Source: Macrostomum lignano
Taxonomy: Eukaryota
Length of the DNA stretch: 42,792 nucleotides
Assembly (NCBI GenBank): GCA_002269645.1
Contig: NIVC01004539.1
Location: forward strand, 1-42,792
Reading direction: 5' to 3'
Shown: one piece after another, positions 4,822 through 39,800 of the stretch
How the letters are laid out: each line of letters starts with the position of its first letter
Position numbering within the stretch: position 1 is the stretch's first letter
Program-made: the position numbers and the translations under genes
The notes under the pieces: generated by a model
Databases searched by the model: none
The model's input: only the letters and a program-made list of their open reading frames with translations
What the model was told of the DNA's origin: nothing

Positions 4822-4868
<47 letters not shown>

Positions 4869-4887
4869 CACAGACAGACAGACAGGC

Positions 4888-4928
<41 letters not shown>

Positions 4929-4987
4929 CACAGACACACAGACAGACAGACAGACAGACAGACAGGCAGACAGACAGACAGACAGGC

Positions 4988-5042
<55 letters not shown>

Positions 5043-5093
5043 AAGACAGACAGACAGACAGACAGACACACAGACAGACAGACACACAGACAC

Positions 5094-5142
<49 letters not shown>

Positions 5143-5207
5143 AAGACAGACAGACAGACAGACAGACACACAGACAGACAGACACACAGACACACAGACA
5201 GACAGAC
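4201..5207. repeat. ~1-kb (GACA)n microsatellite with variant units
   Basis: Directly visible. Variants gatgg, acactaa and ggca occur, and the block starting at 4321 is repeated at 4441 (120-bp period). Confidence 0.98.
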
Positions 5208-15238: not shown

Positions 15239-15246
15239 TTCCAAAG

Positions 15247-15262
15247 TCTTGAAAGAAAAATT
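15247..15262 (-). promoter_or_regulatory. 3' splice acceptor 9 nt upstream of the Aurora ATG (5'-UTR intron or trans-splice site)
   Basis: Minus strand reads ...ttaatttttctttcaag|ACTTTGGAAATG. Confidence 0.55.
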
Positions 15263-17743: not shown

Positions 17744-18103
17744 TGTAGAAAAATAACTGAAGAAATAACACTGGCCAGTGAATACGTTGACAATAACAAC
17801 TTGAAAACCAACGTTAGGATGAAAAGGCTCCTCCAGCAGTATATTTATTTGCGTGGTTGAGAGAGGGGGGTAGAGAATAGATAAGAAGAAAATGGGTAAG
17901 AAGGGCGAGGGCTAAAATGCTCTAACGAGACCGAGGGGGGGGGGGCTGACTGAAAACTCACCGATCGATAATCGGAAAACAAGATAAGAATGTACAGTAC
18001 GTAGAGCGCGGTAGATAGAAGATGGACTAGGCACACAGGGAATGGAAGAAAATGAAAAGGGAGCAAGTGAATTCTATTAGCGCAAGCTGAAATTTCGCGA
18101 CAA

Positions 18104-18348
18104 CGGGAACAGGGGATATTAGATACGGGAACAGGGGAGATTAGATACGGGAACAGGGGAGATTAGATACGGGAACAGGGGAGATTAGATACGGGAACAG
18201 GGGAGATTAGATACGGGAACAGGGGAGATTAGATACGGGAACAGGGGAGATTAGATACGGGAACAGGGGAGATTAGATACGGGAACAGGGGAGATTAGAT
18301 ACGGGAACAGGGGAGATTAGATACGGAAACAGGGGTGATTAGATATGG
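18104..18348. repeat. 22-bp minisatellite, array 2 (same unit)
   Basis: Same unit and orientation as array 1, after a ~360-bp unique spacer. Confidence 0.95.
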
Positions 18349-18596: not shown

Positions 18597-20990
18597 CTAC
18601 TCAAACTTGATGCCCTGAGCCAGCGGCAGGTCCTTGCCATAGTTGATAGTGCAGGTGCTCCGTCGCATGTACTGCTTCCACGCGTCGCTGCCAGACTCCC
18701 GGCCTCCGCCAGTGTGCTTCTCGCCGCCGAAAGCGCCGCCAATCTCGGCGCCAGACGTCGGTATGTTGACGTTGACGAGGCCGCAGTCGGAGCCGCGAGG
18801 CCCGATCCAGCGGAACAGGTTGCTGAGGTCCCGGGTGAATAAACTGGATGACAGGCCCTGCTTCACCTGAGGGAGTTTGGCGGCTGAGGCTGGAGATCTG
18901 CTACTGGTAATCTCACTCAACTAATCTCACTCAACCAATCTCACTCTCTACCAATCTCACTCTCTACCAATCTCACTCAACCAATCTCACTCTCTACCAA
19001 TCTCACTCAACCAATCTCACTCTCTACCAATCCCACTCTACCAGTCTCACTCAACTAGTCTCACTCAACCAATTTCACTCAACCAATCTCATTCTCTACC
19101 AATCTCACTCTCTACCAATCTCACTCAACCAATCTCACTCTACAAATCTCACTCAACCAATCTCACTCAACCAATCTCACTCAACCAATTTCACTCAACC
19201 AATCTCACTCAACCAATCTCATTTTCTACCAATCTCACTCAACCAATCTCACTCTACCAACCTCACTCAACCAATCTCATTCTCTACCAATCTCACTCTC
19301 TACCAATCTCACTCAACCAATCTCACTCTCTACCAATCTCACTCAACCAATCTCACTCTCTACCAATCTCACTCTCTACCAATCCAACTCTTTACCAATC
19401 TCACTCTACCAATCTCACACTCTACCAATCTCACTCAACCAATCTCACTCAACCAATCTCACTCAACCAATCTCACTCTCTACCAATCTCACTCAACCAA
19501 TCTCACTCAACCAATCTCACTCTCTACCAATCTCACTCAACCAATCTCACACTCTACCAATCTCACTCAACCAATCTCACTCTCTACCAATCTCACACTC
19601 TACCAATCTCACTCAACCAATCTCACACTCTACCAATCTCACTCAACCAATCTCACTCTCTACCAATCTCACTCAACCAATCTCACTCAACCAATCTCAT
19701 TCTCTACCAATCTCACTCTCTACCAATCTCACTCTCTACCAATCTCACTCAACCAATCTCACTCTCTACCAATCTCACTCTCTACCAATCCAACTCTTTA
19801 CCAATCTCACTCTACCAATCTCACACTCTACCAATCTCACTCTACCAATCTCACACTCTACCAATCTCACTCAACCAATCTCACTCAACCAATCTCACTC
19901 AACCAATCTCACTCTCTGCGGGGGCCCAGCGGTAGCGCAGCTGCTCTGGTGTGCCGCGACCCAGGCTCGATTCCAAGTGCAGCCACATTAATTTGGGGCT
20001 GGATTGGAATCTTGGCTTGGCTCGCTTGTGCAATTAACGGCCTTGAGAGCCAACCCCCCCAAGGCGCAGTGAAGTGTACATGCCTAACAATTGATAAAGT
20101 TAGGGCCGCTGTACATTCCTGTGTGAGTGTGTGCCTGCGTAACGTATCCGCGCGCTTGTATGCCTGCTCAGGGGAGTCGGCGGAATGGGCAGTAATGCCT
20201 CTCGCCGGTTGTGTGCCTATGACGCTTAAATTGCGCCAGGGTGCACACAACCCCCCTGCCTCTGCCTCTAATAAATCTCACTCTCTACCAATCTCACTCT
20301 CTACCAATCCAACTCTTTACCAATCTCACTCTACCAATCTCACTCTACCAATCTCACACTCTACCAATCTCACTCTACCAATCTCACACTCTACCAATCT
20401 CACTCTACCAATCTCACACTCTACTATAATCTCACTCTCTTCCAATCTCACTTTCTTTCAATCTCATTCTCTACCAATCTCATTCTCTACAATCTCATTC
20501 TCTTCCAATCTCACTCGACCAAATTAAACTTCCTGTTCTAATATTCTCACTTTCTAAGGTGCATTCACCTCACTGCATCCCAACTAATCTCTAACTATTT
20601 CCACTTGAGATTTGAGTCTATCAAATTCTACTAGTGTAATCAATAGTCCATAGTAAATAAGCGCAGATGGTAAACAAAAAATTTACCGAATTATTAATCC
20701 GAATAGCCTCGTCAAGCGAGTCGCACTTGAGCGCGTACACAATCGGAGCGAAAGTCTCCTCTTGCACCAGCGGCGAGTCCGGCTTCAGCCCGGTGATCAG
20801 GGTCGGCTCGACGAAGTAGCCGCCGCTGCTGGACAGGCGAGCGATTCGCTTGCCGCCGAACACGATCTGGCCGCCCTCCGCCTGGGCCCGGGCCACTGCC
20901 GACTCGTATCTGGTGTGCGGTGGTAGATATGGGCTGATGGACAGACTGACAGACAGACAGACAGACACTAAGACAGACAGACAGACACTA

Positions 20991-21023
<33 letters not shown>

Positions 21024-21026
21024 CTA

Positions 21027-21103
<77 letters not shown>

Positions 21104-21106
21104 CTA

Positions 21107-21154
<48 letters not shown>

Positions 21155-21155
21155 A

Positions 21156-21230
<75 letters not shown>

Positions 21231-24200
21231 CCCTGACAGACAGACAGACACAGACAGAACTCACTTTTCCACGGAGGCAGGCGAGTGTAGCGGGCCGTAC
21301 AGCACGCCCTGTTCAACAGGATCGCCAGCCTTGGCCATGAGCGACTCCAGCGCCTTGCCCAGCCGGGACACGACCTGATCGTGCACGGAGCTGTGCAGCA
21401 CCAGCCGCCTGGTTGAGGTGCAGCGCTGACCGGCGGTACCGGCGCAGGCGAAGACGGCTGACTGCACAACCATGTCCAGATCCGCATCGGCGTTCACCAG
21501 GATGGCATTGTTGCCGCCCAGCTCGAGCAGACTGCGGCCGAATCTGCCAGCCACAGTCACCGCAACCTGAGGGGCGCATTATTAGCAATCTGGCCATATT
21601 TAATGAGAAAAAATTGGCACAGCTGAACCAGTTTAGCTACAGTTTGGCACCCTTGACCTCCTCTGAAGTTTGGCACCCTTGACCTCCCCTTACGTTTGAC
21701 ACCGTTGACTCCCTCGAGTTTGGCATTTTTGACCCCCCCCCCTAAGTTTGGCACTCTTGACCTTCCGAGTTTGGCACCCTGACTCCCCCCTAGTTTGGCA
21801 CCCTTGACCTCCCCACCCAAATTTGGCACCCTTGACCTCCCCCCCCCCAGTTTGGCACCCTTAACCCCGCGCAGCCTGACCTCGCGCCCCACGGCGCAGC
21901 TGCCGGTGAAGGACACCAGTGGCAGTCGCTCGTCAGCCGCCATCGCGGCTCCAACGTCGGCCCCGGCGCAGATGGCCGACAGGACGCCGGGCGGGACGCC
22001 ATTCCGTTCGAACACTTCGGCTACAACTCTGGTGACAGCCAGGGTAGTCAGCGGCGTGCTGGGGGCGCCCTTCCACACTGTGCAATTGCCGCACACGGCT
22101 GACAGGCTGAAGTTCCAGCCAAACACGGCACAGGGAAAGTTGAAAGCGGTGATGACTCCGATGACGCCCAGTGGATTCCACACTTCCATTAGAGAGTGAT
22201 TGGGCCGCTCGGATGGTAGCACCTGGTAAAATTCAATGCATTTACTGTGCTCTTTTAGTGGGTAAAAGGCGGGAGTAAACTTGACTTTGGCACCGCCTCG
22301 TCATCTAATTAGTACACTGATTACTAGTCGTTAAAGGCGGGAGTAAATGCTTTAACGCCTCGTCACCTAATTAGTTCTGCACAAAAAACTCAAAATTTAA
22401 TCACAGCATACTACTGATAAATGATAAGAGTAGTTTGTTGCGTAAACTGTTTAGACTACCAACGAGTACTTTAATTCGTTTTCAGATGGCTTATCAACCT
22501 TCTTTCGGGCATGAAAACCCCAGGGCCTGCAGTGTACGCTCGGTATTTCAACCGCCCTGGACACAACCGCTCGAACTGTGGGGTAAGAGAAATTTTCTAC
22601 CGGAAAGAAAAGCGAGTTTCTTTCCAACGCTTGCTGCTATACACAAACTCGGGTAATAGACCACACCCACTGTACAGCAGTCTGCTTCTAAGATATTCAC
22701 CCATTTGACCCACACAGATTTGCTAGGTAACCACATTGAAAGGTTCTTTCACTTTGTGGTATGTTTTGAAATTCAACGAAACCAACGAAATGCAAGAACG
22801 ATGTGATGCATTAAAGTTTTAACTGATTCATATTACTCCTACTCTATCTGAGACATTACTGTAGAATAATATTTAATTACAGTTCCTATCTGATCATTCA
22901 TTTAGCACTCTACTGAACCCGAAACATCCCCAGGTGGTCAGTTGGTTTTTAGAACCCTGCCAGGTCCTCAGAATCCCACTAGGTCTTCAGGTCAGGACCC
23001 CACTAGGTCCTCAGGACCCCACTAGGTCCTCAGGTCAGGACCCCAATAGGTCCTCAGGTCAGGACCCCACTACGTCCTCAGGTCAGGACCCCAATAGGTC
23101 CTCAGGTAAGGACCCCACTACGTCCTCAGGTCAGGACCCCACTACGTCCTCAGGACAGGACCCCACTAGGTCCTCAGGTCAGGACTTCACTAGGTCCTCA
23201 GGTCAGGACCCCACTAGGTCCCCAGGACCCCACTACGTCCTCAGGTCAGGACCCCACTAGGTCCCCAGGACCCCACTACGTCCTCAGGTCAGGACCCCAC
23301 TAGGTCCCCAGGACCCCACTACGTCCTCAGGTCAGGACCCCACTAGGTCCCCAGGACCCCACTACGTCCTCAGGTCAGGACCCCAATAGGTCCTCAGGTA
23401 AGGACCCCACTACGTCCTCAGGTCAGGACCCCACTACGTCCTCAGGACAGGACCCCACTAGGTCCTCAGGTCAGGACTTCACTAGGTCCTCAGGTCAGGA
23501 CCCCAATAGGTCCTCAGGTCAGGACCCCAATAGGTTCCCAGGACCCCACTACGTCCTCAAGTCAGGACTTCACTAGGTCCTCAGGTCAGGACCCAAATAG
23601 GTTCTCAGGACCCCACTACGTCCTCAGGTCAGGACCCCACTACGTCCTCAGGTCAGGACTTCACTAGGTCCTCAGGTCAGGACCCCAATAGGTTCTCAGG
23701 ACCCCACTACGTCCTCAGGTCAGGACCCCACTACGTCCTCAGGTCAGGACTCCACTACGTCCTCAGGTCAGGACCCCACTACGTCCTCAGGTCAGGACTC
23801 CACTACGTCCTCAGGTCAGGACCCACTACGTCCTCCGGACAGGACCCTACTAGGTCCTCAGGACCCCACTAGGTCCTCAGATCCCCACTAGGTCCTCAAA
23901 ACGCCAACGCCAACAGGTCCTCAGAACCGCCAGGTCCTTCAGATGGTCCTCACCTGGCCGCTCAACGTCCTGGACAATCCAACACCGTAATCGCAAATGT
24001 CAACAACTTCCTGCACTTCGCCCACCCCTTCGGGCAGAATTTTTCCCATTTCAAGCGACACCAGCTTGCCAAGTAGTTGCAGATTTTTGCGCAGATTGTC
24101 GCCAATCTGGCGAACAATCTCTCCCCTAGCCGGTGGCGTGGTCTCCGCCCAGGCTGGCCAAGCGGCACGAGCCGCCTCAATCAGTTTGTTATAATCTTCC

Positions 24201-24710
24201 GGGGTGCCTTCAACTACTGAGGCAATTTTTCTACCATTAGCCGGACAGATGGAGTCAATCCGATTGCCGCTGCCGCTCCAGGCGCCGCCGCTGTACACTC
24301 CTTTGTTGACTTCCTGCGAATATGGAGTGCACAAGTTATTGTTTGCAGAGGGTTCTACACTTGCTGAGACCATTGTTAATGACTTTGCGTCACTAATTGC
24401 AACAATACTGAATTTCCAAATCATCAGGCATGTACACCCTCTGTGCCTTAAGGGTTGGTCCTCTAAGTTACCATAAAAACATAAATTTCAAGCTTAATAA
24501 TAACAACAATTCAGTACACAGTGTACTTAAATATTGATTACTAACCTCTAGTCCAAGATCTTTCAGCCAAGCATACTTAGGCTCATTAATTAGGTATCCA
24601 GGTGAGGAGGACATTGCCGCTCTGAGATTGTGCTGCACTTGCAGTAGCCTCGGTAGTTGATAAAGTCGGGCAACGTTGGTCAAAGAGAATCGTCCAATTG
24701 GCAATGGCAT
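18597..24710 (-). CDS. ALDH7A1: Alpha-aminoadipic semialdehyde dehydrogenase / antiquitin (553 aa from first ATG)
   Basis: Exons 24710-24546, 24313-23954, 22222-21881, 21566-21265, 20909-20687, 18866-18597. [26 protein letters not shown], catalytic Glu in LLELGGNN, catalytic Cys in GTAGQRCT, C-terminus [13 protein letters not shown]. Confidence 0.97.
18909..20520. repeat. 14/16-bp minisatellite (accaatctcactc[a/tct]) in ALDH7A1 intron 5
   Basis: Directly visible. It is interrupted by a SINE at 19918-20273. Confidence 0.97.
19918..20273 (+). mobile_element. tRNA-derived SINE (family B) inserted into the minisatellite
   Basis: Head gcgggggcccagcggtagcgcag (A-box-like), ggctcgattcc (B-box-like), unique body, ends in ctctaata. 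aatctcactctct is present on both sides. Confidence 0.7.
20937..21258. repeat. (GACA)n microsatellite filling ALDH7A1 intron 4
   Basis: Directly visible. It shares the acactaagacag variant with the 4.2-kb array. Confidence 0.97.
21642..21865. repeat. ~24-28-bp degenerate minisatellite (tttggcacccttgacctccc) in ALDH7A1 intron 3
   Basis: About eight visible units. Confidence 0.9.
22961..23900. repeat. 18/24-bp minisatellite (ccccactaggtcctcaggtcagga) in ALDH7A1 intron 2
   Basis: Directly visible. It is the source of the spurious SSGQDPT ORF. Confidence 0.96.
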
Positions 24711-25224
24711 AGAGTGAGCCGATTATCGATTTTATTGTCTAAACTTTGCTTGACACACGATAATTAATAGCTTTCAGTTCGGCCTTGAGAACTCTAGTTT
24801 GTTGGCATTAAATGGAAACATCACAACATGGTACAGTATATATGGATGGCTAGGCAAAGAGACCACAAGTCAAAACTAGCAAACACTACTAATATTTCAT
24901 TGCTGGTGTAAACTAGGAAGGTTGCAAGTAAGGAAGGAGAGTATAAATTGGAAGCAGTCACGAAATTTCAATTGCAACATTAGCAAACAATAATATGTAC
25001 CTAAATGCCTCTAAAATATATCTAAATTAACTTGTATAAGAGCCCAAAAATCTTCATCAAACATTTAGGTTTGGAAAAAAAAGACAAACAAAGAGTTATA
25101 GCAAAGTTATAGCAATATAAAATTATTTCATATAGTTTTTTCATTTGTAGCCTTGTCTTAGGCCTAGTTCTAGGTAGAAATTTAAATTTATTTTTAAAAA
25201 GAAAGGCTAGGCTTATCTATTAAT

Positions 25225-26207
25225 ACTTAAAAGCTTAACTAACTTAACAATATAATTGTTAAGAAAGTTTGATAGTCTATTTTGTCTAGGCCTTGTTATT
25301 ATTAAAATGTTTATGGTTATGTGCTACCCCCCTTATTTATACTAGCTATACAACTTTTGACAAAAATGTGACTTATATATAAAAGAAACCAAAGTAAAAA
25401 CTAATATAATTTTGGGTAAATGGCAGGAGTAATGACTTTATTAATGAAGCTAAATGCTTTATCATCTATGTAGTACTAGGTATATATATATATTTTTCCA
25501 GATAGGCATATAAGGCATTTTATAGATGCTAGTCACTTCAGTGACAAGACATTTTGGCAATAATTTTGTGACAAATAACATACATGCGCAACCTTGAGAA
25601 TTATTTGGCCATTTCTATTGGCAACATATACATGTAAGTTGCTATTGGCTAAGAGCAGTCACGTGACTACTCTTCTATCCAATAGTGACTTATATGTATG
25701 TTACCAATAGAAATTATTACTTAAAAGCTTAACTAACTTAACAATATAATTGTTAAGAAAGTTTGATAGTCTATTTTGTCTAGGCCTTGTTATTATTAAA
25801 ATGTTTATGGTTATGTGCTACCCCCTTATTTATACTAGCTATACAACTTTTGACAAAAATGTGACTTATATATAAAAGAAACCAAAGTAAAAACTAATAT
25901 AATTTTGGGTAAATGGCAGGAGTAATGACTTTATTAATGAAGCTAAATGCTTTATCATCTATGTAGTACTAGGTATATATATATATTTTTCCAGATAGGC
26001 ATATAAGGCATTTTATAGATGCTAGTCACTTCAGTGACAAGACATTTTGGCAATAATTTTGTGACAAATAACATACATGCGCAACCTTGAGAATTATTTG
26101 GCCATTTCTATTGGCAACATATACATGTAAGTTGCTATTGGCTAAGAGCAGTCACGTGACTACTCTTCTATCCAATAGTGACTTATATGTATGTTACCAA
26201 TAGAAAT
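25225..26207. repeat. Near-perfect ~493-bp tandem duplication upstream of ALDH7A1
   Basis: Unit 1 starts acttaaaagc at 25225 and unit 2 at 25719. The only difference I spotted is C6 vs C5 in gtgcta(c)n. Confidence 0.93.
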
Positions 26208-26211
26208 GGCC
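26100..26211. mobile_element. Palindromic MITE-like element centred on gtcacgtgac (truncated copy at 25607-25714)
   Basis: Arms ggccatttctattgg... / ...ccaatagaaatggcc. Weaker symmetry extends outward to caacct...aggttg. Confidence 0.7.
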
Positions 26212-27023
26212 AGGTAAATCCCTAGGTTGCATCCAAGAATAACAAATAAACATTTTGGCAATAGCAATTATCATATTTACTTGAATAACTGCATGTATAA
26301 ATACTATGTACAAATTTCCAATATACAAGTTGCTTAATTTTAGTGCTATGTAGCACTATTGCAAAATTAGTTATAGGCCTTATTCATATATAACCCAATT
26401 GCAATGCATCGGCATTTTGATAGATAGCATCTAGTGTGGATTAGCCTAGCACAGTGCAGCATGGCAAAGCAGCAGGAGGCCTAGCATAGTATAAGAAAAC
26501 AGCAAGAGACAAAAAAAGCTAAAAAGCAAAGTACTTCTCTCTATCTATCAACTACCATGCTACTGTGGTATAGTTAAGGTAGGCATCCGGCATATCTAAG
26601 TCATGCACTACAATAGGGATGTATAACATTTACTATGTCTAAGCATGTTTATAAATCTATGCTACATGTTTGCAAGATCTGAAATTGTATTCCAAAAAGG
26701 TGCTATATTGGCAACTAACAACCTAGAAAGTGGAAATTTAGCACAAAACCTAGGTCCTACACTATTAATAAGCAAATAAATAAGTTTAATTTGATAATGG
26801 GCATAGTTCTAGTTTACTTCATTATATTATTCTGCCTTTTGTTAAATTATTTCTTCTATCAATTTCAGGTTCAAGGTCAAGTCAAGTCCTAAACAGGATA
26901 ATAAACAAAGGCCCAGTACAGCATGGCGCCAAAGGGGTTATTATAGTACATGCCGCGCCAGATATACTTCTCGAGATGGGCCTTGAAAAGTGCGTTGCTC
27001 AAAGGGTTGTGGTAGGAGTACAG

Positions 27024-29690
27024 TAGAGCTGTCACGAGATCTTGAAGAGACAAGATTCGAGACAAGATCTCGACATTTTTTCTCGTCTCAAGAAATCTCG
27101 AATTTTGTCAAGAAATTCGAGACGAGATTCAAGAATTTTTCTGATACCTTTTTTCAAAAGCTTTTAAGTGATAAGATTGTTGTTGTTTGTTGTAACACGC
27201 TTGATAGGGCAATTTTCAAATGGTAAAATCTAGCCAATATCAAGCAATTATTTAACGAACATCGTTATATACAAGTTTGCATTGCATATGCATTCTTTTA
27301 GTTATCATTTCAGTTCTACAGCAAGGTATATCATAGCACACTTGAAGACAATCTACACAGGTCTTTTTTGACGAATTAGTAATAGACATAGTAGGGCCAA
27401 GGGCCTATATGTTACAAGCATAAATTCTTATGAATAAATAGCAAAGAATTTAAACTAGAATTAAGAAAGTATTCTGCAAAATCTAAAAAAATATATTTTA
27501 GAATTGTATCTTATCAAGACATTTAAGACAAGATAAGGCAAGATAAGAGCAAGACAAGATGCAATTCTGAAATATATTTTTTAGATTTACTTTGTCTTGT
27601 CTCGTCTCGAAATTCTTGACTTATAAGTAGGGACTCCAGTGAGGTTACCGTAAAGCAATAATTACACGAAAAATCGTAAAATAATGTTTTTTAAAAATGA
27701 AATTGCCATGCATAGAAAATGTTTATAGTAAAAACAAAATATACATGTTAAAGAAGAGTTTCTATTCTTTTTAATGAGATAAAGAAACAAAAAATATATA
27801 CATTGTATGCAGGGTAATGTCCCACTGAACTTCGTCTTTTTTTTAATACACTCGTTTTGTTGCCAAAAAAAGTGACTTTCGAAAGTTCGTTTTTTTGTTG
27901 GAAAGCAATTATTTTAACAAAATATAACTATTTATTGATACAAACAACTATATTTACAAACATTTTTTGACATTTTGAGAAGAAATTTTTTTTCTTTTTT
28001 CCCTATTTAGACAGTATAAAAAAATTAAAGTTGAATAAAAATCGTACCCGTATTTCCGAAGCTTAGTAAAACCCGAAAATGAATGCTACTCCGTAATATG
28101 ATTACATTAAAAAAAACCGCACATGTCTATCTACATCCGCCAAAAAGTTATTGAAGCCTGTTTTTTGCCTATCTCTTCAGTGTAAAATAGACAGATAAAA
28201 CAGAAAATTTAAATTTTTTTCTAGCAGTAATTTCCGAAGACTATTCTTCTACTGCATTTAATAGAGGAACTTATAGGAATTCTTCACAGCACTTTTATAT
28301 CTTTCCACATACATCCGCCGAGGAGCAGCAGCAATGTTTGCTTTTTAGTAGCGATACTACTTACATACTACTTATATAAAAAGTGGCTTATTATGGCTTT
28401 TCTTAACCAAAAAGAAGACGTTTTACCATTGCAAATTAGTTTTGAAGGCAAAATAATACAAATAAATGTAGGCTTTAGCTTATTGAGCTATAGCAATTGC
28501 AATCCCAATAAATGACCCCTTGAATGCATGTAACCTTGGTCTGCAATTCAAACTCCCATAAAAATAAACTGAATTTCATAAGAAATTGTGTTTATTCCAT
28601 TTGTAAGTTTAATAAGCAACTTCACAATATACAATTTTAAGTACAATATATTTTTAAATACTTCTTTACACTTGTTTACAGAAATGTTCATCGGTAACTT
28701 TATTCACAATATACAATTTTACAATAAGGATAGGCTCAATCAAAAAATATACAAGACAATAGTATCAACAATTATTTACCTATATGTTTTACAGTTAAAA
28801 AGCAAAGCAGACAATATACATTATGTGTGTAAAGACAATAAGCATTAAATATATGCTAACTTCAGTCTTCAGTTGCAGCTACTCAACAAGCAATAATATT
28901 GGAAAAAAAGAACAAGAGCTTTTAAATAAACCAAAGTACACAAAAAACATTTTCATATGTTTTTCATTAAAAAAACAAATCAAACTTTATATATATTCAT
29001 TATTCTAAAAAATATAATCATTCAAAGTTGAAAAATGTGCAATTTTAAGATATGCTATCAAGTTCCAGTAGCAAAAAAGTCACAAAATTGGTGAATTTTT
29101 TAACCTTTGACAATATATAGGAAAAAATGGTATAAAAATATATACTTTTATATGTTGTGGAGTAAACAAATAAAAAAGATTTCAGAAAAAGCAATTAACT
29201 TTTAAATAATAGTCATTTGAAATTTTAATTTTGCTCTATTTTTGATGTGCATTTTTCACTTTTTAAAAATTCAAATGCAAACCCCAAGAAAGATACATTA
29301 GAAAGAATAAAAACAATTTGTTAATCTTATGTAGAACTGCTTGCTCTTTAAAATGATACCAGACTCAATATTGTATGTTGAATAGCAAAAAAGATATGAC
29401 AACAAAAAGTGAAAAATTTTGTTTTCGTACATCTAATGGCAACAATCTATAATGTATTTTTCCTATCTAAAAAACGTAATTTTTTGGGCACAAAAAATGC
29501 TATAACTTTTTTATTACTCAACCAAATTTAATAAGTGAAGCCATTTTGTGATGCTGTTATTGTCCTCTATCAGATACATATCTGAAAATATATAAATTTT
29601 AAAGTTTCAAAATCTCACTGGAGTCCCTATTATAAGCCTTTTTCGTCTCAAATCTCGTCTCGAATAAAATCTCTAATTTTGACAGCTCTA
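27024..29690. mobile_element. Non-autonomous hAT DNA transposon (Buster-type nnnTAnnn TSD)
   Basis: 11-bp TIR tagagctgtca / tgacagctcta, perfect 8-bp TSD gagtacag (27016-27023 and 29691-29698), subterminal gagacgag/ctcgtctc repeats. Confidence 0.9.
27628..29629. mobile_element. Nested ~2.0-kb TIR element inside the hAT copy; superfamily unresolved
   Basis: 16-bp perfect TIR tagggactccagtgag / ctcactggagtcccta, ttataag on both flanks, AT-rich interior with no intact ORF. Confidence 0.85.
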
Positions 29691-32436
29691 GAGTACAGAT
29701 GCAAGAAAATACATGATGAAAAATTAATATAACAAAGTAAAGTAGAATTATGAAATAATATAACGAAGTAAACTAGAACTATGTCTGATAATGATTTATA
29801 CTTATTAAAATTTTACTTTAAATGCAAGACAAATCTATATGTTAACTTAGGTTAGCTAGCTATATACTTTATATAAAATTAAAAATAAATAAGAATATGA
29901 TATTATATCCTATTTACTTTAGGCCTACTATACTCTATAATATATGATATAATTAATATAATATTTAAATTGAAAGTTAAATAGGATGAAATTCAAGCCT
30001 AGGGCTAGGCCTATTGCATAGGCCTAATCTAAGGCTATGTCCAAGTTTAAAAAATTCAAGCAATTTAGCCAGTTAGGCCAACATTCTAAAAAATTAAATG
30101 CTTTCAATATGTAATAGGGGACCTACTGCATAGGCAATAATAAGAAAAATTATATGGAATATGCCTATGACCTATCATACCTATGTTGTACAATATCTAT
30201 AGACATAGTCTATATTATAAATTTATAGGCCATAGCCCCAGTTACTTATAGTATTATTAAATGACTAAACTTAAAGTACCCTATAGAGGTAGGGTTTATA
30301 CCTCTATAACCTTCGGAAGTCTTGACTCTTGAAAAGATCTATGCAAAACTGCCACCCTAATTCTCGCTTTATATGCTGTTAATGCTACATAGTCATCGGC
30401 CTACTATATACTATAGTAAAGATAAAGAATAAAGATTCAGCTCTACATTCTATTCTACAAACAGTCCGTTCTTAGAGTCAGACATTTATCTGTTTGTTTT
30501 TGTTTTTGCTTTTCGTAAGACCTCACAAACATGTCGAGGGTCCTTTCATTAAATGTCGAGTTCATGAACAGCTCGCTTGCAGCTGCGCTGTGCATTAGCC
30601 GGCGACATGCACGCCGCGGCGGGTCGTGCGTACGCTGTCATCATGCGTGCACGCCTCAACAATTTTTGTTGTTTAAAATGACGCCAAAACTGTGGCTGTT
30701 ATATTTTATCAATTTTGATTCCAGAATTTGAGAATTCCAGAAGCATTTTGATTTTTCGAAGCATAACTTTTTAGCTCATAATTTAGGGGCTTGACTATAC
30801 TTTTAATTTTAAGTATAAAATTTTAACTTTAGGCATTTCAGGTAAATTAAAACTTTCCTCGAAGGTAAAGCTGTGCATATAGAGCACATCGTTATTTACA
30901 CGGCTATTTTTCTTGCATTAATTCTGGTCGCTTCGTGAAAATTTTCTTTTATAATAAGCAGTTAAAATGTAACCTAACCTGTGTCTGGGTATAATAACGA
31001 TAGAAGATGTTAATATAGCTCAACTCAAATTAAAATTTTTGTTAGAGTGAAATATGTTATTTATTGTTACATTTATTCTCGTACATAATAATTTAATATA
31101 ACAGCTTAGCGGGAAATTGCTTACTGTGAACAATTTGGTACGTGAGAATACCAAGTCCTCTTAGACAGCATCATAAATCTGAAAAAAAATTAATAGCGGA
31201 TATAAACAATTATTTCACATGTGTACGAGCTACATGTTACTTTGTTTATTATTGTTTGCTACTATGTACTGTATTTCTAAACATTTTCCTAAACGAGTTG
31301 CGTATTGTTGGGTTCAAAATTAGCATTATTATTCAGATTTTGTTATTTGGAAGATTTGAGCCGCTAATAAAAATTTATTGCAAAAAATAAGCAATTAAAA
31401 AAGAGTTTAGTAAATTATAGTGGCGCGCACTGACGCACAGAAATACATGTATTAATTGAAAAGCTATAGTGACGCAACCCTAAGCAAATGGAATGCCAAT
31501 TGATATTTGATGTCGTCTAATTGTCTTTGTGGACAGAGGCTATTGTAGAATTAGTTGGGGACATGCCCTTGGCAACGATCCCAATGCAGGCAAACGTTCA
31601 ATGCAAAGAGCGGCAAAATTTGAGCTTCTGCGTCGTTCGTCAAGTTTGGTTGACGTCATGTTCTTTTCACTGACATGTAGTTTTTCAGAAGTTAAAATGG
31701 TGACGGTGTTTTGTGGGGGCGATTTGTTGGCCGGGGGTGGTCCTCTTTACGTGCACGCAATACTATATGCGATGCATCCGTATACACATGTAGCTATATG
31801 CATAGGCTAATATGGAAGCTCTTACATGGTACACGGAATGTATCAGGAGAAAAAGTCAAACCAAGCCCTGCAGTATCTCTAGAGACTGTCGATTGCTAGG
31901 GAAAGTGAGGGATCGGAGTGAGAACAATATTGCTCTCTAACACAACAGGAGCTAAGCTTCCACCTCGCAGAAAAACTGACAAAAAGCAGATAGAATAAAA
32001 CTTCTTAGTGTGGGATTTGACCCAGCGCAGTCAAGTATGCAATTTTACCGGCAGCGAAAAGAGGTGCTGCAGCGGCAGCAGCTAGGGGGGGGACTAGAAG
32101 AAGAAGCCGATTGTCAATGCAAGAATGTGCACACGAGCGTAGAGACATGCCTCTTTGACTTCCCAGCGACTTCTGCCCTAACCTCATGAATGCATTAGCA
32201 CTCGATTTTGAGACTATAGAAGTCCGGTATAGCATTTAAACTCAGTTACCTTGGTAACTAAACATGTTTACTCCGTAGCTACTGCGAGCTTGAGACATTG
32301 TGGGGTGGGTGAAGCGCACAATTGGCAACTTGAAATGGCTATAAAGTTGCTGCATCAGCGCGCTCCTCTGCACAGCTCCGTTAACTAAGACAGCTTTTAT
32401 CTGCAGCAATTGCTTTTTCAGCTGGAATTATAGTTA

Positions 32437-34979
32437 ATGTCTACAAGTATTCTCAGAATTGCCATTATATTGGCAGTTCTGGTTTCACTTACATCTCCAC
32501 TGACTTTTGTCTTCGACAAGAGGCCGGACCTGTGCTACAATGCTGCGACTGATGCGAGCGGTCAGCGCACAGTGCTCGGGGTCGCCGATGCTCGAGTGTG
32601 CGCTGTCGAATGCGCGAGCAACACGACCCTGTGCTCAGTCTATGAGTACTTGCATAGCAACCGGTCATGCATTCTCGGAGACAGCTGCAACCTGCTGCTT
32701 TACTGGCAGCTCAGCACCGGGCCGGTCTGCAACACGCAGGTGCTGCGAACCAGAGCAGATTGTGAGACTACTTCGATGAGACCTGCGGCTCCGACTACTA
32801 CGACTCCGATTACGACTTCGACTACGACCTCAACGACTGCAACACCGATGGTCGTCTTTAATGGTAGGCGGAATTTTTAATATTTTTATAATTAATGCTA
32901 TATAATAGGCGTTGAAAATCTTGGTATATCTTTTTCAAGCAATCGGCGTGTACAAAATTTATATGCACACAATTATTTACGCCACTACTTTTTCTCTCTT
33001 AGTGGAGTCAAAGCTGATAAAAGCATAAGTGAAACGAAGTATATCATTTATGCCTTACTGGCTGTACATGTATAATAATATTGTACATCATATCCTCTTC
33101 TACCTATGGAATAGTACGAGCGTATAGTCTCTCCCTAGAGGAATTTCATCTGTCGAAATGCCGACGCATGTATGAATCAGGGACCAGGGAGTTAAAGAAA
33201 GAACTGATCATGATGATGCAAATTTTTTTCAAATTCTACATTCGCATATTGGCCTAAGTGCAGTATTGACTACTGGCAGTTGGTCTTTGTCATTTTTCTC
33301 TCTTATTTGGGAGCTATTTCTTAAAGTAATATATAAGACTTGTTAATTATGTTTTTCTCTGTCACCTTTGCACTCTTTCTAGGAGACGATTCTTACATAT
33401 TTTTGCTAACATATGTATATAAGTTTCAAGTCCACACGTGCTTATTGATGGGTCATCATGAGTTGTATAGGATCGATCAGAGCCTGCATACCGGGTACAT
33501 GTTTATGAGTTTCTTAGACGCTTAAAAGCTTCAATAGATCTGTTTTGTACCACAGGAATTCTCTGGGATCAGCCCAAATCTTCCCATCTTCATATTCTGT
33601 ACCTTCCGCTTGATTATTTACCTTGAGTGCAAAATTTTACATTGTTTTCTGTTCATTTATTTGCTGAAACAGGATACTCCGGCAAGTTCAGAGACTTTGA
33701 TCGCATTGACACCCGGTGCAGCAACCCCTGAAACCTCGTTCTTTTCTCCTGGCTCCCCATCATTACTGCTCAAAAAAAGAAAAGTCATTGGTAATTTGTC
33801 AGCAGTAGCTGTCACCCTGTCTAGAAGCCTCGATATGACTGTGGAATCCAAGGTCACCTGCAGGTTGAGAATATGATTAGTTGCGCTTTGAGAAATTTGA
33901 GTGCTTCGACAGGTTCTGTGAGGAAACTTAGTGAGAAAACCAAACCATAAGGGCTGCAAATGACCAACAAGCGAAATCGATCTCTGTCACTCAAATCGAC
34001 AAGACATTGTCTTGTCAGTAATGAACAAGCAGCACATCCAGCAGCCATTCGCAGGCTAAATATACTTTTAATGCTCAGATTGTAAATACATTTTCCGCGA
34101 AGTGTTAGAGTACATTTAGCGACTTCTAGAATGTACACGTAATGGATTTCAATTGAGCGCTCATCCCTTATCAAACGCACTTCAGCGAGTGGCACAACTG
34201 GAAAGACGGGATCAGTGCAATCCTTCAAACCACCGGAAGTGAACACCTGCTACAAAATCGAAGCGTGGGGCGCCAACGGTGGCCAGTCAACAAAAGGTGC
34301 AACTGGAGGCAAAGGAGCTTACAAAATGGCCTATTTCAATCTGACCGAGACGCTCAAGATTGTCGTTGGAAAGTCTGGGACCAACTCAGGAAGTGATCAC
34401 AGCAATAACGGCGGCGGCGGCGGTGGAGGCGGAACCTTTGTCTATATAACCAGAAGCAGTAACTCGCATCAGCTGCTTATGGCTGCCGGAGGAGGCGGTG
34501 GAGGCGGTGATGGCTCCAGCTCGTACTCGGGAAAAGACGGCAGCGATGGCACTAGCAGCACTTGTTCCGGCTCGACTGTCGGACAGGGAGGTCCCAGCAA
34601 GGGCACTGACAGGTCTGGCGGCAGTGGAGCTGGCTGGGGCTCTGCTGGAGATTCCGGACCCACAGGCAACAATGGAGGCTATGGAGGACAGAGCGCCACC
34701 GGAAGCTGGACGGGAGGCGACGCAGACGGCAAAGGCGATGGTGGCTACGGCGGAGGCGGCGGAGGCGGCGGCACAGACGGTAGCGGCGGAGGCGCCGGCG
34801 GCGGAGGCGGCGGCTACTCCGGTGGTTGCGGCGGATCAGGCAGCAGCGGCGTTGGAGGAGGCGGAGGCGGCAGCTTCGTGGACGCATCGGGTAGGAACTC
34901 CGAGGGATCGAACGGGCACAACAGCGGTCCTCCTGGAAAGGTCGTCATTGCAGCCGTCGCTCGTGCCAACTGCAACTAA
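32437..34979 (+). CDS. Secreted protein: signal peptide + PAN/Apple-like domain + Thr-rich stalk + ALK/LTK-type glycine-rich domain (406 aa)
   Basis: Exons 32437-32863 and 34186-34979 join in phase 1 (VVFN|ASGTTGKTGSVQSF). PAN-like CAVECASNTTLCSVYEYLHSNRSCIL. GRD hallmarks YKIEAWGANGG, LKIVVG, GGGGGGTFV, LLMAAGGGGG, GGGGGSFV, NSGPPGKVVI. No TM segment. Confidence 0.85.
33100..34048 (-). pseudogene. Unidentified degenerate antisense coding remnant in the intron of the PAN-GRD gene
   Basis: Overlapping minus-strand frames give protein-like text across two apparent frameshifts and several stops: MAAGCAACSLL...SPYGLVFSLSFL / LQVTLDSTVISRLLDRV...VSELAG / FALKVNNQAEGTEYEDGKIWADPREFLWYK. No family recognised. 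Confidence 0.35.
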
Positions 34980-36899: not shown

Positions 36900-39800
36900 C
36901 GAGTGCGTGCCTGCGTACAGTATTGGCGCTTGATGTGCTCAGGATTACTGCCAAGATTGAGTTGGAGAGGCTTAACTACATCTGGCTGCACCGGAAGGAA
37001 CTTCTGTCAAAGTGCTTGCACGGATTGCGAGACACCCTCCACGAGAATGACGGAGACCCGAGCGAGATCGACCCGAGGGGGATCGACATCGGGAACCAGG
37101 TCATCCTGACGTCTAGCTAACGTCGGTGGCCCTCGGTACCGTCTAGAACGTCGGCAGGATGCCATGGCGTATGTGCACGCCTTCGGCCGCCCAGATCTGT
37201 TCCTGACAATGACGTGTAACCCGAAATGGCCTGAGATCCTTGCTGAGCTGCTGTATGGCCAAACTGCCGTGGATCGGCCGGCCGGGTATCACCGACTGGG
37301 TGTTCGAGCCAAAGAAGACCTTCCTCGACAGGCTGAAGATTCTGTTTGGCGACACGCTGGGTCGAGTCTGCGCTCTCGAGTGCCAGAAGCGAAGTAACTA
37401 CTATCATGCCATTATTGATTGCCTACTTTATTATGTACTAATAAAATGGTTAAAATGTTATTCATAGAGACAGAATCATTATATATGTATTTGCTGATCA
37501 TCTGGTTAGATCGAAACTTTCATTTTCCAATCCCACTCCAAGTAGGTCTTCCCCACGTGCACGCACTGCTTTGGTTGACTGTTAAGCTGAAGCCGGGTCA
37601 GTATGTCGCCATCATCAGTGCAGAACTCCCGGATCCCGTTGCCGACGCACAAGCTGGTCGGTGTTGTGAGCTGCGCCTCGCAATGCCCTTGCCCCGACCT
37701 CTGCGCTCTCCGCCCCTCCTCTCCCTGCCACTGGTTTTTTCTGGCTTGCCCCCTCCGTCTAAAGCTGCTATTCATTTTTTGTTCTCACTTTCATCAGCCC
37801 ACATTTTCATTGGCTGGCGTATTTTCATCTCTCTCTCTCGCGTGGGCTAGTCCAATCATGTGTCTCGCCGCGGAGGCACCTGATTGGCTAGCCTTCCCTC
37901 TCGCCCTTCAACTCTGTGAGTTTTGCCCCCACCCCCAGCCCTGCGTGGCTAAGCCCTCCCCAGTCCCCTGCTCAGTGCTCACCCAGTATTTATGTGCGCG
38001 CGCGGCCCTCGCCCGGCTCTCGCCCTCCCTGCTCTCTCTCTACAACTCTAGCTCTACACGTGTTTGAGTGAAAGTGAAGCTTGAAATTGAAATACAGTCA
38101 ACTGAGGCTGAGATATTAGAGGCCACGCCTGCATCAGCGCGACAAGTGACCCCGCCCGGTAAGACAGCGTTCGCTTTCGTTAATTTGTCCCGCCTTCATT
38201 ATTTACCTCTCTCGCCACCGTCTTCCTTCGGGTCTGCGAAGTGTCTGTACGCCTCCAGACCCGTGCTCACCTCTGCTGTTGCTGCTGAGTGGCTACCTGC
38301 TCACAGCCTCCTCATCTGCGTCTCCCTCTCTCCGTGGGGCTGGCCGAGTGTCTGTACGCTCCCAGCCTCTCCACCTCCACCTCGAAGTGTTCGTACGCCT
38401 CGGGGGTCGCCACTCTCTCGCCTATCCCACCTGGCAAGCTCTGGGCAGTCCAGTACCCGAACCCCTGATCAGCCCGTCTGCGGTCCGCACGGACGGAAGC
38501 AGAAAATACAACACATGGTCCCTGTGTAATGCAGCTGAATCCAGACGCGTCGTGCATGGAGAATGGCGCATGTAGCAAGCGCTATCCGAGAGAGTTCTAG
38601 GCAGTCACCATGATTCAAGAGGACGGCTACCCGCACTATCATCGCATATTAACTTAGATAAGCGGCTTCTCGGTGGCCAAGGTCGCAAAGCTGCGCGGCG
38701 GTCAGAAGGCAAACCGCGCTAGGTCGTGCTTACTGCCCTGTGCTGCTGCACGAGTTTAGGTCTCACCTGAACGTCTAGATCTGTGCGACAGTCAAGGCGT
38801 TAAACTACGTCGGTACCCTTATATTTAAGGGCAGCGATATTCCAAGTCCGGAAGGAGCTAGCTGCTGCTGCTGATGCGAAGGCCGACAGCCATGCTACTA
38901 CGGCTAGCGACGCGGCGGCTCTTCAGGAAAGTGGCGATCAGCAGCCCCATCAGTCAGCTCAGACCAAGGCGGCGCCAGCGAAGCGCAAGTCAGGCAGCAC
39001 CTTCTGGGCGGGTACTTTAGTCCCATGGAGGTGGTCAGCACCATCTTGGGCTTTTAAGTGCACATGAACAGTCGGTATCCGGCTGTCATCAGACTGGCCC
39101 TTCATCAGCCTGAAGGACGACCAGGATGCAGTTGCGCGAGACCTGCTGTACCAGGAGGTACCCCGGAACTTCACCTGAGACAACAGGGCGCACCAGTGGC
39201 ATCGCGCGAGGCACAGCCGAGAGACTGCCGATCAGCCAGCTGGCGTGCTGACGACTGGCAACAACGGCCGCGTCTACACAGTTAGCCCTCGGACGGGAGA
39301 CAGTTTCTGCCTGCGCCTGCTGCTGGTGAATGTTCGAGGCCCGACGTCATTCGAGGCGTTGCGCACCGTTGATGGCGTCCTGCTGCCGACCTTCAGAGGA
39401 CTGCTGCCGCCTGCCAGACTCGTGGACTGCTGGAAGACGACAGGCACCATGGTGACTTTGCCTGTGTGAAGCCACGGAGACGCGGTTGCCAGCGGCTCTG
39501 CGCCGCCTTTTCGCTGCCATTTTGTGTCGCCATGCAGGCGGCCCCAGCGACCCTGCAAAGCTGTGGCAGAAGTTCTCCGGCGAGTTGATCTGCTAGACTA
39601 AGGCTATAGCCCAGAGGCTGCCGAGTTGGAGGTTTAGCGAGAGCTGTAGACACTGCTGGACACCATGGGAGGAACTGAGCTGCTTGCCTACGGACTGCCT
39701 GAGCCACGTGTTGAGCCAGATCAGGTGAATTTCCTTTAACCCTTGTAGTAACTGAGACAGAGGCCGTGTTTGCGGTGTAGTCGAAACTCTTACACTCTCG

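What the first reader, a model, noticed from the sequence alone, without database searches (positions are those of the whole stretch)
24840..30480. Localised RIP-like hypermutation domain: CpG wiped out and CG->TA double hits inside transposons
Seen: by manual count there are only about 8 CpG in 24841-26940 (2.1 kb), about 4 in 28381-29640 and about 5 in 29701-30480, against about 17 in 480 bp of AT-rich sequence at 9181-9660. TpA-rich words such as taggccta and ctag are conspicuous. The spectrum can be read from internal repeats. The hAT subterminal motif appears as intact cgagacgagat (~27118), as gagacaagat (~27045) and as taagacaagataagg (~27524), i.e. CG->CA and CG->TA. The two arms of the MITE (26100-26211) differ at caac/taac, tg/ta, ttgc/tcac and gagca/gagta. 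Established: 5mC deamination gives CG->TG/CA, while CA->TA is the hallmark of fungal repeat-induced point mutation. Inference: a TE-targeted cytosine methylation/deamination process that also hits CpA operates locally in an otherwise CpG-rich animal genome.
Basis: partly seen in the sequence, partly recalled or inferred. Interest (0 to 1): 0.8.

Follow-up and report, generated by a model that had tools for sequence, protein, structure and literature searches.

The report
Methylation-type CpG decay patch, flatworm
This stretch of the flatworm Macrostomum lignano genome is one of several AT-rich blocks where C-to-T changes have removed nearly all CpG sites. The pattern looks like ordinary decay of methylated cytosines, with a weaker effect at CpA, and not like fungal repeat-induced point mutation.

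Summary
The window is contig NIVC01004539.1 of Macrostomum lignano.

**The deficit has two origins**
- **Segments A (24.8-26.9 kb) and C (29.7-30.5 kb)** are old sequence. The MITE in A has 2 CpG and 39% GC. A copy elsewhere has 10 CpG and 49% GC. Twenty of their 25 differences are C>T-type in the window copy.
- **Segment B (28.38-29.63 kb)** lies in a young nested transposon. A 98.7% identical copy elsewhere has the same CpG-poor 3' part, so B arrived CpG-poor.
- The young hAT keeps its CpGs.

**Evidence from other loci**
- Similar CpG-poor blocks make up about 7% of about 350 kb sampled.
- Between homeologs, 28% of CpG-bearing sites in these blocks differ by a transition, against 2-3% outside.
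- CA/TG<>TA transitions are 2-3 times higher inside the blocks. Transversions are not raised.

**RIP is not supported**
- CpG, not CpA, is the main target.
- CpA+TpG is not depleted in A or B.
- A 493-bp tandem duplicate and five 7.7-kb Helitron copies (99.7-99.9% identical) are unmutated.

**Most likely cause:** sparse germline DNMT1/DNMT3 methylation followed by deamination. This is inferred; methylation was not measured.

The parts
24781..26926 (.). Segment A. Old AT-rich, CpG-poor block (7 CpG in 2.1 kb), directly upstream of the ALDH7A1-like gene.
   Evidence: CpG positions. rho CG 0.16, CA/TG 1.14, TA 1.12. TAGGCC and CTAG enrichment.
25219..26207 (.). Two tandem copies of a 493-bp unit inside A. 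They differ by one A/T substitution and one 1-bp indel.
26079..26233 (.). Palindromic MITE, full copy. A partial duplicate lies at 25586-25712. It is decayed relative to a second family copy at L014 12506-12676.
   Evidence: CpG 2 against 10, GC 39% against 49%. 20 C>T-type, 3 T>C and 2 transversion differences.
26779..26831 (.). Left arm of a 53-nt inverted repeat (81% complementary). Its partner is at 29754-29806. The pair brackets the hAT insertion site, linking A and C as one pre-insertion sequence.
   Evidence: (I1).
27016..27023 (.). Left 8-bp target-site duplication GAGTACAG of the hAT-like element. The right copy is at 29691-29698.
27024..29690 (.). hAT-like non-autonomous element with perfect 11-bp TIRs (TAGAGCTGTCA / TGACAGCTCTA). 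It carries degenerate subterminal (C/T)(G/A)AGAC(G/A)AGA repeats and is interrupted by the nested element. Its ends are CpG-normal.
27628..29629 (.). Nested 2,002-bp TIR element with 16-bp TIRs (TAGGGACTCCAGTGAG) and a 7-bp TSD TTATAAG at 27621-27627 and 29630-29636. A second copy, 98.7% identical, is at L009 6937-8942 with TSD ATATAGC. The homeolog L008 has the empty site.
28381..29629 (.). Segment B. CpG-poor 3' part of the nested element: 4 CpG, o/e 0.20. The L009 copy has 5 CpG here, o/e 0.25. The deficit was inherited with the element.
   Evidence: rho CA/TG 1.32, TA 0.78.
29699..30480 (.). Segment C. Continuation of the old block on the other side of the hAT. It shares A's TAGGCCTA-rich signature: CpG o/e 0.32, TA 1.31, CA/TG 0.76.
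24552..24712 (-). First coding exon of the ALDH7A1-like gene (ATG at 24712). The gene is annotated as a 553-aa product starting at 18597. This marks the left, CpG-normal border of the domain.
   Evidence: Reading, ORF, annotation.
30500..30660 (.). CpG-dense 160 bp (about 20 CpG) that ends the domain on the right.

Best explanation
The region is one patch of a recurrent class of AT-rich, non-genic blocks in the Macrostomum lignano genome where cytosines mutate to thymine much faster than elsewhere. The hierarchy is CpG far above CpA, and CpA above CpT and CpC.

**Proposed history**
1. Segments A and C are one old sequence that includes a MITE. It lost almost all CpGs in place and drifted towards TpG/CpA and then TpA.
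2. A hAT-like element inserted into this block.
3. A 2-kb TIR element inserted into the hAT. Both are young, with perfect TSDs and TIRs, and they still carry CpGs.
4. The 3' 1.25 kb of the nested element (B) was already CpG-poor when it arrived. Its signature matches CpG-poor block DNA, so it may be a captured piece of such DNA.

**What is shown and what is inferred**
- Shown: the in-place C>T decay of the MITE copy, the inherited deficit of B, and block-specific CpG hypermutability at two other loci.
- Inferred: the cause. The most likely one is sparse germline 5-methylcytosine laid down by DNMT1/DNMT3 on these blocks, with minor DNMT3-type CpA methylation, followed by deamination.
For: **Composition**
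- Deficit confirmed and localised.
- In A, 43 CpG are missing against a surplus of 33 TpG+CpA. B shows the same direction.

**MITE copy in A against the copy at L014**
- 9 of 20 CpG cytosines, 7 of 26 CpA, 4 of 16 CpC and 0 of 15 CpT are T in the window copy. Only 3 of 79 T sites are C.
- Four-arm parsimony gives 8 C>T, 0 T>C and 1 transversion in the window arms, against 1, 2 and 1 in the L014 arms.
- Both strands are hit equally (10:10) and there is no 5'-neighbour preference.

**Nested element**
- Both copies have a CpG-normal 5' part (18 and 20 CpG) and a CpG-poor 3' part (4 and 5 CpG).
- The clean CpG differences (28193, 28529) have TG/CA in the window copy.

**Other loci**
- CpG-poor blocks occur in L008, L009 and L013-L015. 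They make up about 7% of complex 800-bp windows in about 350 kb.
- Homeolog differences inside these blocks: CpG-bearing sites differ 10/22 against 14/342 outside, p=8e-8. Pooled, the figure is 28% against 3.0% (AT-rich normal DNA) and 1.7% (GC-rich normal DNA).
- Per kb, blocks against AT-rich and GC-rich normal DNA: YpA 20.3 against 9.2 and 6.5; YpT 9.3 against 6.4 and 7.1; transversions 6.6 against 7.8 and 4.5.
- A 340-bp repeat has 1-2 CpG inside a block and 12 and 7 CpG in copies outside blocks.
- CpG is not hypermutable in normal DNA of this contig.

**Literature**
- M. lignano retains DNMT1 and DNMT3 and has low 5mC (PMC11292947, PMC9246332, PMC10658182, all citing Wasik 2015).
Against: - Methylation itself was not observed.
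- No homeolog of the region itself could be fetched. The three homeologous contigs end before 24.2 kb. Ongoing hypermutability is therefore shown at other loci and only inferred here.
- Each of the two transposon families has only one external copy, so the ancestral states rest on one comparison plus arm parsimony.
- Segment C lacks the TpG/CpA surplus (o/e 0.76).
- The 340-bp repeat shows CpG loss but no non-CpG C>T asymmetry, so the CpA component is not seen everywhere.
- The AT-richness of the blocks and the TAGGCCTA motif of A and C are not explained by CpG decay alone.
- An early survey found only DNMT2 in M. lignano (PMC3710501), which disagrees with the later reviews.
Confidence: 0.6

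Rival explanations
1. RIP-like repeat-induced hypermutation. A process detects duplicated DNA and mutates C to T with a CpA preference, as in Neurospora.
For: - Segment C has TpA/ApT 1.21 and (CpA+TpG)/(ApC+GpT) 0.98.
- CA/TG<>TA mismatches make up 9 of 15 non-CpG transitions between internal repeat arms.
- CpA>TpA changes occur in the MITE copy.
Against: - CpG, not CpA, is the main target: 45% against 27% per site in the MITE, and 28% against 5% between homeologs.
- The second RIP index is 1.25 in A and 1.41 in B. CpG-normal controls reach values as low as C does: 0.88-0.89 at 9-10.5 kb.
- The 493-bp tandem duplicate inside the domain has no transitions.
- Five 7.7-kb Helitron copies at 99.7-99.9% identity have CpG o/e 0.96 and 2 C>T in total.
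- The nested element copy in the domain carries fewer TpA alleles than its copy elsewhere, 1 against 3.
- The 9-of-15 count is not above the roughly 45% expected from composition.
Confidence: 0.04
2. Inherited composition only. All CpG-poor pieces, not just B, arrived with that composition as old or foreign transposon families. No local process acts here.
For: - B is CpG-poor in both copies.
- A and C share a private signature, the TAGGCC(TA) motif, that is rare elsewhere: 0-2 per 20 kb in most loci.
- No other copies of A or C were found.
Against: - The MITE within A is CpG-rich in its other copy. Arm parsimony puts 8 C>T changes on the window arms.
- Blocks of the same type at other loci lose CpGs between homeologs at 10-20 times the background rate.
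- The 340-bp repeat loses CpGs only in the copy inside a block.
Confidence: 0.12
3. A regional C>T bias that does not depend on methylation. Examples are more spontaneous or enzymatic deamination of unmethylated cytosine in late-replicating or easily melted AT-rich chromatin, or an AID/APOBEC-like deaminase.
For: - All C>T classes are somewhat raised in the blocks: YpT 1.45 times and YpC 1.3 times.
- The blocks are much more AT-rich than CpG loss alone can explain.
- In the MITE, CpC is hit as often as CpA.
Against: - The 9- to 19-fold CpG specificity is the hallmark of 5mC, not of unmethylated cytosine.
- Transversions are not raised.
- There is no TC or CC 5'-context and no strand clustering, 10:10 and interspersed.
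Confidence: 0.15

Closest known systems
Germline 5mC deamination leaving CpG-depleted, TpG/CpA-enriched DNA, with mosaic invertebrate methylomes (established knowledge: Bird 1980; Suzuki and Bird 2008)
   Same: - CpG deficit with a TpG/CpA surplus.
- CpG transition rate raised more than 10-fold only inside the depleted compartment.
- Sharp mosaic borders.
- The species keeps DNMT1 and DNMT3.
   Different: - In most invertebrates the methylated, CpG-poor compartment is the bodies of housekeeping genes.
- Here the exons sampled have o/e 0.71-1.05. The depleted compartment is AT-rich intergenic and intronic DNA, about 7% of the sample.
- Methylation was not measured.
Repeat-induced point mutation (RIP) of Neurospora crassa and other fungi
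   Same: - G:C to A:T transitions on both strands.
- Local AT enrichment.
- TpA gain in part of the region.
   Different: - The process is not triggered by duplication.
- CpG is preferred over CpA.
- CpA+TpG is not depleted in A or B.
- Long near-identical repeats are untouched.
Non-CpG (mainly CpA) methylation by DNMT3-type enzymes in animals (established knowledge: Ramsahoye 2000; Lister 2009)
   Same: The context hierarchy CpG far above CpA, and CpA above CpT and CpC, matches the ranking of C>T excess in the blocks between homeologs.
   Different: - It is known mainly from vertebrate oocytes, embryonic stem cells and neurons. It is not known as a germline mutational footprint in a flatworm.
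- The signal here is only 2-3 fold and is absent in one repeat family.
hAT superfamily non-autonomous elements and MITEs
   Same: - 8-bp TSD.
- Short TIR starting TAGAG.
- Subterminal short repeats.
- No transposase ORF.
   Different: - The nested element has a 7-bp TSD in both copies, so its superfamily is left open between hAT-like and P-like.
- No autonomous partner was seen.

Membership tests
RIP (repeat-induced point mutation) | Triggered by duplicated DNA of a few hundred bp or more; both copies mutated | tested here: not met
   The 493-bp tandem duplicate has 1 transversion and 1 indel. Five 7.7-kb Helitron copies are 99.7-99.9% identical with 2 C>T in total.
RIP (repeat-induced point mutation) | C>T with a CpA preference, ahead of CpG | tested here: not met
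   Per-site hits in the MITE: CpG 9/20, CpA 7/26, CpC 4/16, CpT 0/15. Between homeologs: CpG 28% against CpA 5%.
RIP (repeat-induced point mutation) | RIP indices: TpA/ApT high and (CpA+TpG)/(ApC+GpT) below about 1.03 | tested here: not met
   A gives 1.15 and 1.25. B gives 0.91 and 1.41. C gives 1.21 and 0.98, but CpG-normal controls at 9-10.5 kb give 1.17-1.27 and 0.88-0.89.
RIP (repeat-induced point mutation) | RID/Dim-2 type machinery acting premeiotically | not testable with these tools
   No proteome search was left and there are no experimental data.
Germline-methylated CpG-decay compartment | CpG deficit matched by a TpG/CpA surplus | tested here: met
   A: 43 CpG missing, 33 extra TpG+CpA. 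B: 16.5 missing, 38 extra. C is the exception, with 19 fewer than expected.
Germline-methylated CpG-decay compartment | CpG transitions strongly raised inside the compartment and not outside | tested here: met
   At other loci: 10/22 against 14/342, p=8e-8. Pooled: 28% against 1.7-3.0%. No excess in normal DNA of this contig. In the region itself the evidence is indirect, from the MITE and nested copies.
Germline-methylated CpG-decay compartment | DNMT1 and DNMT3 present in the species | not tested
   Taken from reviews citing Wasik 2015 (PMC11292947, PMC9246332). An earlier survey reported only DNMT2 (PMC3710501).
Germline-methylated CpG-decay compartment | 5mC actually present on the residual CpGs of the block | not testable with these tools
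   No methylome data are available here.
hAT superfamily (outer element 27024-29690) | 8-bp TSD and short TIRs of the YAGNG type | tested here: met
   TSD GAGTACAG on both sides. TIRs TAGAGCTGTCA, 11/11 matching.
hAT superfamily (outer element 27024-29690) | hAT transposase, or demonstrable relation to an autonomous hAT | tested here: not met
   No ORF over 86 aa in the region. No other copy in about 350 kb. The element is therefore called hAT-like and non-autonomous.

The most novel reading that the evidence does not exclude
Macrostomum lignano may have an unusual methylome for an invertebrate. In this reading, DNMT1/DNMT3 methylation is confined to a small set of AT-rich intergenic and intronic blocks, about 7% of complex sequence, and leaves gene bodies unmethylated. 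It would include enough germline CpA methylation to leave a mutational footprint, so that old blocks drift from CpG loss towards a RIP-like TpA-rich end state, as in segment C.
Probability: 0.3. Interest if true: 0.65.

Novelty: new member of a known kind. Interest (0 to 1): 0.45.

Why it matters
- These sequence footprints predict where the low-level 5mC of M. lignano sits: discrete AT-rich non-genic blocks rather than gene bodies. They also predict that it is mutagenic there.
- That would make M. lignano a tractable, RNAi-amenable animal for studying repeat- or heterochromatin-directed methylation without gene-body methylation.
- The analysis also removes a claim of RIP in an animal, which would have been a much larger surprise.

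Tried and rejected
**Searches that did not reach the target**
- **Homeolog of the region.** Contigs g1 (L001), g5 (L005) and g4 (L006/L007) all end before window 24.2 kb.
- **Protein searches.** Searches with the ALDH N-terminus and with a PAN + glycine-rich + Pif1 chimera returned no M. lignano neighbour gene near the region. The chimera was swamped by glycine-rich words.
- **Exact-ORF look-ups.** Three returned nothing.
- **Other copies.** No other copies of A, C or the hAT were found in the window or in about 350 kb of loci.

**Explanations considered and rejected**
- **NUMT origin.** A has no T/G skew (A 35%, T 34%).
- **TAGGCCTA as a deaminated CGGCCG.** That change needs transversions. 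In the MITE, CGGCCG became TGGCCA instead.
- **APOBEC-like editing.** There is no 5' context preference and both strands are hit equally.
- **Microsatellite artefacts behind the CA<>TA excess.** The flanking contexts are complex sequence.
- **AT-richness alone.** AT-rich CpG-normal controls do not show the excess.
- **Non-coding RNA genes.** No Rfam or tRNA gene lies in 24.0-31.5 kb. The only hit is a sub-threshold hairpin match to the MITE palindrome.
Full report
**Source and context**

The window is the whole 42,792-bp contig NIVC01004539.1 of the Macrostomum lignano assembly GCA_002269645.1, in the same orientation. Annotated genes on it are a G(s)-alpha gene (6605-8956, +), a protein kinase (12814-15247, -) and a 553-aa aldehyde dehydrogenase starting at 18597 (-). 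I read the first coding exon of that dehydrogenase at 24552-24712. The finding therefore lies in the intergenic DNA directly upstream of that gene. A CpG-dense 160 bp at 30500-30660 closes it on the right.

**Observation check**

All four CpG counts reproduce exactly:

| Interval | CpG | o/e |
|---|---|---|
| 24841-26940 (A) | 8 | 0.16 |
| 28381-29640 (B) | 4 | 0.19 |
| 29701-30480 (C) | 5 | 0.32 |
| 9181-9660 (control) | 17 | 1.05 |

- Against the o/e of 0.95 measured in AT-rich control DNA of the window, Poisson P is 7e-13, 2.5e-5 and 3.5e-3.
- Other non-tandem 1-kb windows have o/e of roughly 0.6-1.3, most of them 0.75-1.1. Sampled exons have 0.71-1.05.
- The deficit is patchy. 26927-28352 carries 35 CpGs at o/e about 1.

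**Anatomy**

- **hAT-like element, 27024-29690.** Non-autonomous, with 11-bp perfect TIRs and the 8-bp TSD GAGTACAG.
- **Nested TIR element, 27628-29629.** 2,002 bp, with 16-bp perfect TIRs and the 7-bp TSD TTATAAG, inserted into the hAT.
- **Segments A and C.** The hAT interrupts an older sequence whose halves are A (24.8-26.9 kb) and C (29.7-30.5 kb).
  - They share a private signature: TAGGCC at 44 times expectation, CTAG at 3 times, low GA/TC and TpA o/e above 1.1.
  - A 53-nt inverted repeat brackets the insertion site.
- **Inside A.** A palindromic MITE lies at 26079-26233. A 493-bp tandem duplication (25219-26207) has copies that differ by one transversion and one indel.
- **Segment B.** This is the 3' 1.25 kb of the nested element. 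Its signature differs from A and C: TpA 0.78, CA/TG 1.32, and no TAGGCC.

**Composition tests of RIP**

| Segment | TpA/ApT | (CpA+TpG)/(ApC+GpT) |
|---|---|---|
| A | 1.15 | 1.25 |
| B | 0.91 | 1.41 |
| C | 1.21 | 0.98 |

- The rest of the window gives about 1.2 for the second index.
- CpG-normal DNA at 9-10.5 kb gives 1.17-1.27 and 0.88-0.89.
- CpA+TpG is in surplus in A (33 extra against 43 missing CpG) and in B (38 extra). It is in deficit only in C.
- On composition, only C looks RIP-like, and no more so than unaffected DNA.

**Copies elsewhere in the genome**

About 350 kb of M. lignano sequence was fetched around G-alpha paralogs and Helitron genes.

1. **Nested element.**
   - It has a 98.7% identical copy at L009 6937-8942, with its own 7-bp TSD. 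The homeolog L008 has the empty site.
   - Both copies have a CpG-normal 5' part (18 and 20 CpG, o/e 1.16 and 1.25) and a CpG-poor 3' part (4 and 5 CpG, o/e 0.20 and 0.25).
- B's deficit therefore came with the element.
   - Of four CA/TG<>TA differences, three have TpA in the L009 copy.
   - The clean CpG differences have TG/CA in the window copy.
2. **MITE.**
   - It has a copy at L014 12506-12676, at a site where L013 and L015 carry other, unalignable sequence.
   - That copy has 49% GC and 10 CpG. The window copy has 39% GC and 2 CpG.
   - Of 25 substitutions, 20 are C/G in L014 against T/A in the window. By context these are 9 of 20 CpG cytosines, 7 of 26 CpA, 4 of 16 CpC and 0 of 15 CpT. 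Three are the reverse and 2 are transversions.
   - Using the four arms as mutual outgroups, the window arms carry 8 C>T (3 CpG, 3 CpA, 2 CpC), 0 T>C and 1 transversion. The L014 arms carry 1, 2 and 1.
   - Hits are equal on both strands and show no 5'-neighbour preference.
   - Segment A has therefore undergone real C>T decay, including at non-CpG sites. This happened before the 493-bp duplication, whose copies share all these changes.

**A genome-wide compartment**

- CpG-poor (o/e 0.04-0.3), AT-rich, complex blocks of 2-6 kb also occur upstream of, and in introns of, two other G-alpha loci (L008/L009, L013-L015).
- About 7% of complex 800-bp windows in the sample fall in this class. Their signature is CA/TG 1.04-1.27 and TpA 0.70-0.91.
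- In L008 against L009, 10 of 22 CpG-bearing positions inside the blocks differ by a transition, against 14 of 342 outside (p=8e-8).

Pooled homeolog pairs, with neighbouring bases required to be identical:

| Class | CpG-poor blocks | AT-rich normal | GC-rich normal |
|---|---|---|---|
| CpG-bearing sites differing | 28% | 3.0% | 1.7% |
| YpA transitions per kb | 20.3 | 9.2 | 6.5 |
| YpT transitions per kb | 9.3 | 6.4 | 7.1 |
| YpC transitions per kb | 7.9 | 6.2 | 6.5 |
| Transversions per kb | 6.6 | 7.8 | 4.5 |

- The YpA excess is significant: p=4.7e-5 against normal DNA and p=0.010 against YpT within the blocks. It lies in complex sequence, not microsatellites.
- With L013 as outgroup, polarised C>T in a block is CpA 5/105, CpT 1/126, CpC 0/50 and CpG 1/4. 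In normal DNA, CpA is 1/702.
- A four-way homeolog alignment of the CpG-normal first 24 kb of this contig shows no CpG hypermutability.
- A 340-bp repeat has 1-2 CpG in its copy inside a block and 12 and 7 CpG in copies outside. It shows no non-CpG asymmetry.

**No repeat induction**

- Five Helitron copies share 7.7 kb at 99.7-99.9% identity, have CpG o/e 0.96 and carry 13 private substitutions, of which 2 are C>T.
- Together with the clean 493-bp duplicate, this rules out a RIP-type response to duplication over the lifetime of these repeats.

**Interpretation**

- **Shown:**
  - the deficit is real;
  - A's MITE decayed by C>T in place;
  - B's deficit is inherited;
  - blocks of this type are 10- to 20-fold CpG-hypermutable and about 2- to 3-fold CpA-hypermutable, with no rise in transversions;
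  - repeats as such are not targeted.
- **Inferred:** the cause is germline 5mC on these blocks, followed by deamination.
  - The hierarchy CpG far above CpA, then CpT and CpC, is that of animal DNMT3-type enzymes (established knowledge).
  - M. lignano is reported to keep DNMT1 and DNMT3 and to have low 5mC (PMC11292947, PMC9246332, PMC10658182). An earlier survey saw only DNMT2 (PMC3710501).
- **Speculative:** segment C's TpA-rich, CA/TG-poor state would be the late stage of the same process.
- **Unexplained:** the TAGGCCTA motif and the strong AT-richness of the blocks.

**Comparison and verdict**

- The process works like classical methylation-driven CpG decay in a mosaic methylome, with a small non-CpG component. 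It fails every tested defining feature of RIP.
- The less usual aspect is the location of the compartment, which is non-genic AT-rich blocks rather than gene bodies. That pattern is not described for flatworms in the literature I could read.
- Limits: I could not measure methylation, obtain a homeolog of the region, or sample more than one extra copy of each transposon family.

Noticed in passing
window 24841-26940 and 29701-30480: The palindromic word TAGGCC(TA) occurs 14 times on both strands in 2.4 kb, 44 times expectation. AGGCCT occurs 7 times here against 2 in the other 37 kb, and the word is rare in other loci. It cannot derive from CGGCCG by deamination. Its origin is unexplained.
   Followed up: partly
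window 26151-26160 (also 25658-25667; L014 copy): The centre of the MITE palindrome, TCACGTGA, keeps its CpG in both window copies and in the L014 copy, while 8 of the 10 family CpGs are lost in the window copy.
   Followed up: no
L009 6937-8942 against L008 about 8531-8537: The nested 2-kb TIR element is present in one homeolog and absent from the other, with a clean 7-bp TSD. The family was therefore active after the homeologs diverged.
   Followed up: partly
window 1-24150 against L001, L005, L006/L007: Four near-identical versions of this locus exist in the assembly (BOX15_Mlig030909 g1, g2, g4, g5), 0.4-1.7% diverged. This fits the polyploid or duplicated karyotype. The other three contigs all end inside or next to tandem repeats.
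   Followed up: partly
window 37089-40671; L002-L004, L011, L012: A degenerate Helitron/Pif1 relic in the window is about 80% identical to a family with at least five 7.7-11.9 kb copies at 97.8-99.9% identity. That family looks recently or currently active.
   Followed up: partly
window 32437-32880 and 34215-34979 (+): An ORF with a signal peptide and PAN domain and an ORF with an ALK/LTK-type glycine-rich domain look like one secreted-protein gene. No matching M. lignano protein came back from the database search.
   Followed up: partly
window 18597-24712 (-): The contig has an annotated 553-aa aldehyde dehydrogenase. A search with its first two exons returned no M. lignano protein. Either the annotated N-terminus differs or the word index missed it.
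   Followed up: no
whole window and all loci: Minisatellites are very abundant, for example ACAG(n) at 4202-5212, 22-mers at 16942-18345 and 24-mers at 22968-23880 inside the ALDH gene. About 30% of 800-bp windows in the 350-kb sample fail a simple complexity filter.
   Followed up: no
window 26087-26224: A sub-threshold Rfam match to the plant mir-399 hairpin on both strands (25 bits against a gathering score of 57). It only reflects the MITE palindrome.
   Followed up: yes
window 30500-30660: A 160-bp stretch with about 20 CpGs sits at the right edge of the CpG-poor domain. It could be a promoter or the end of another element.
   Followed up: no
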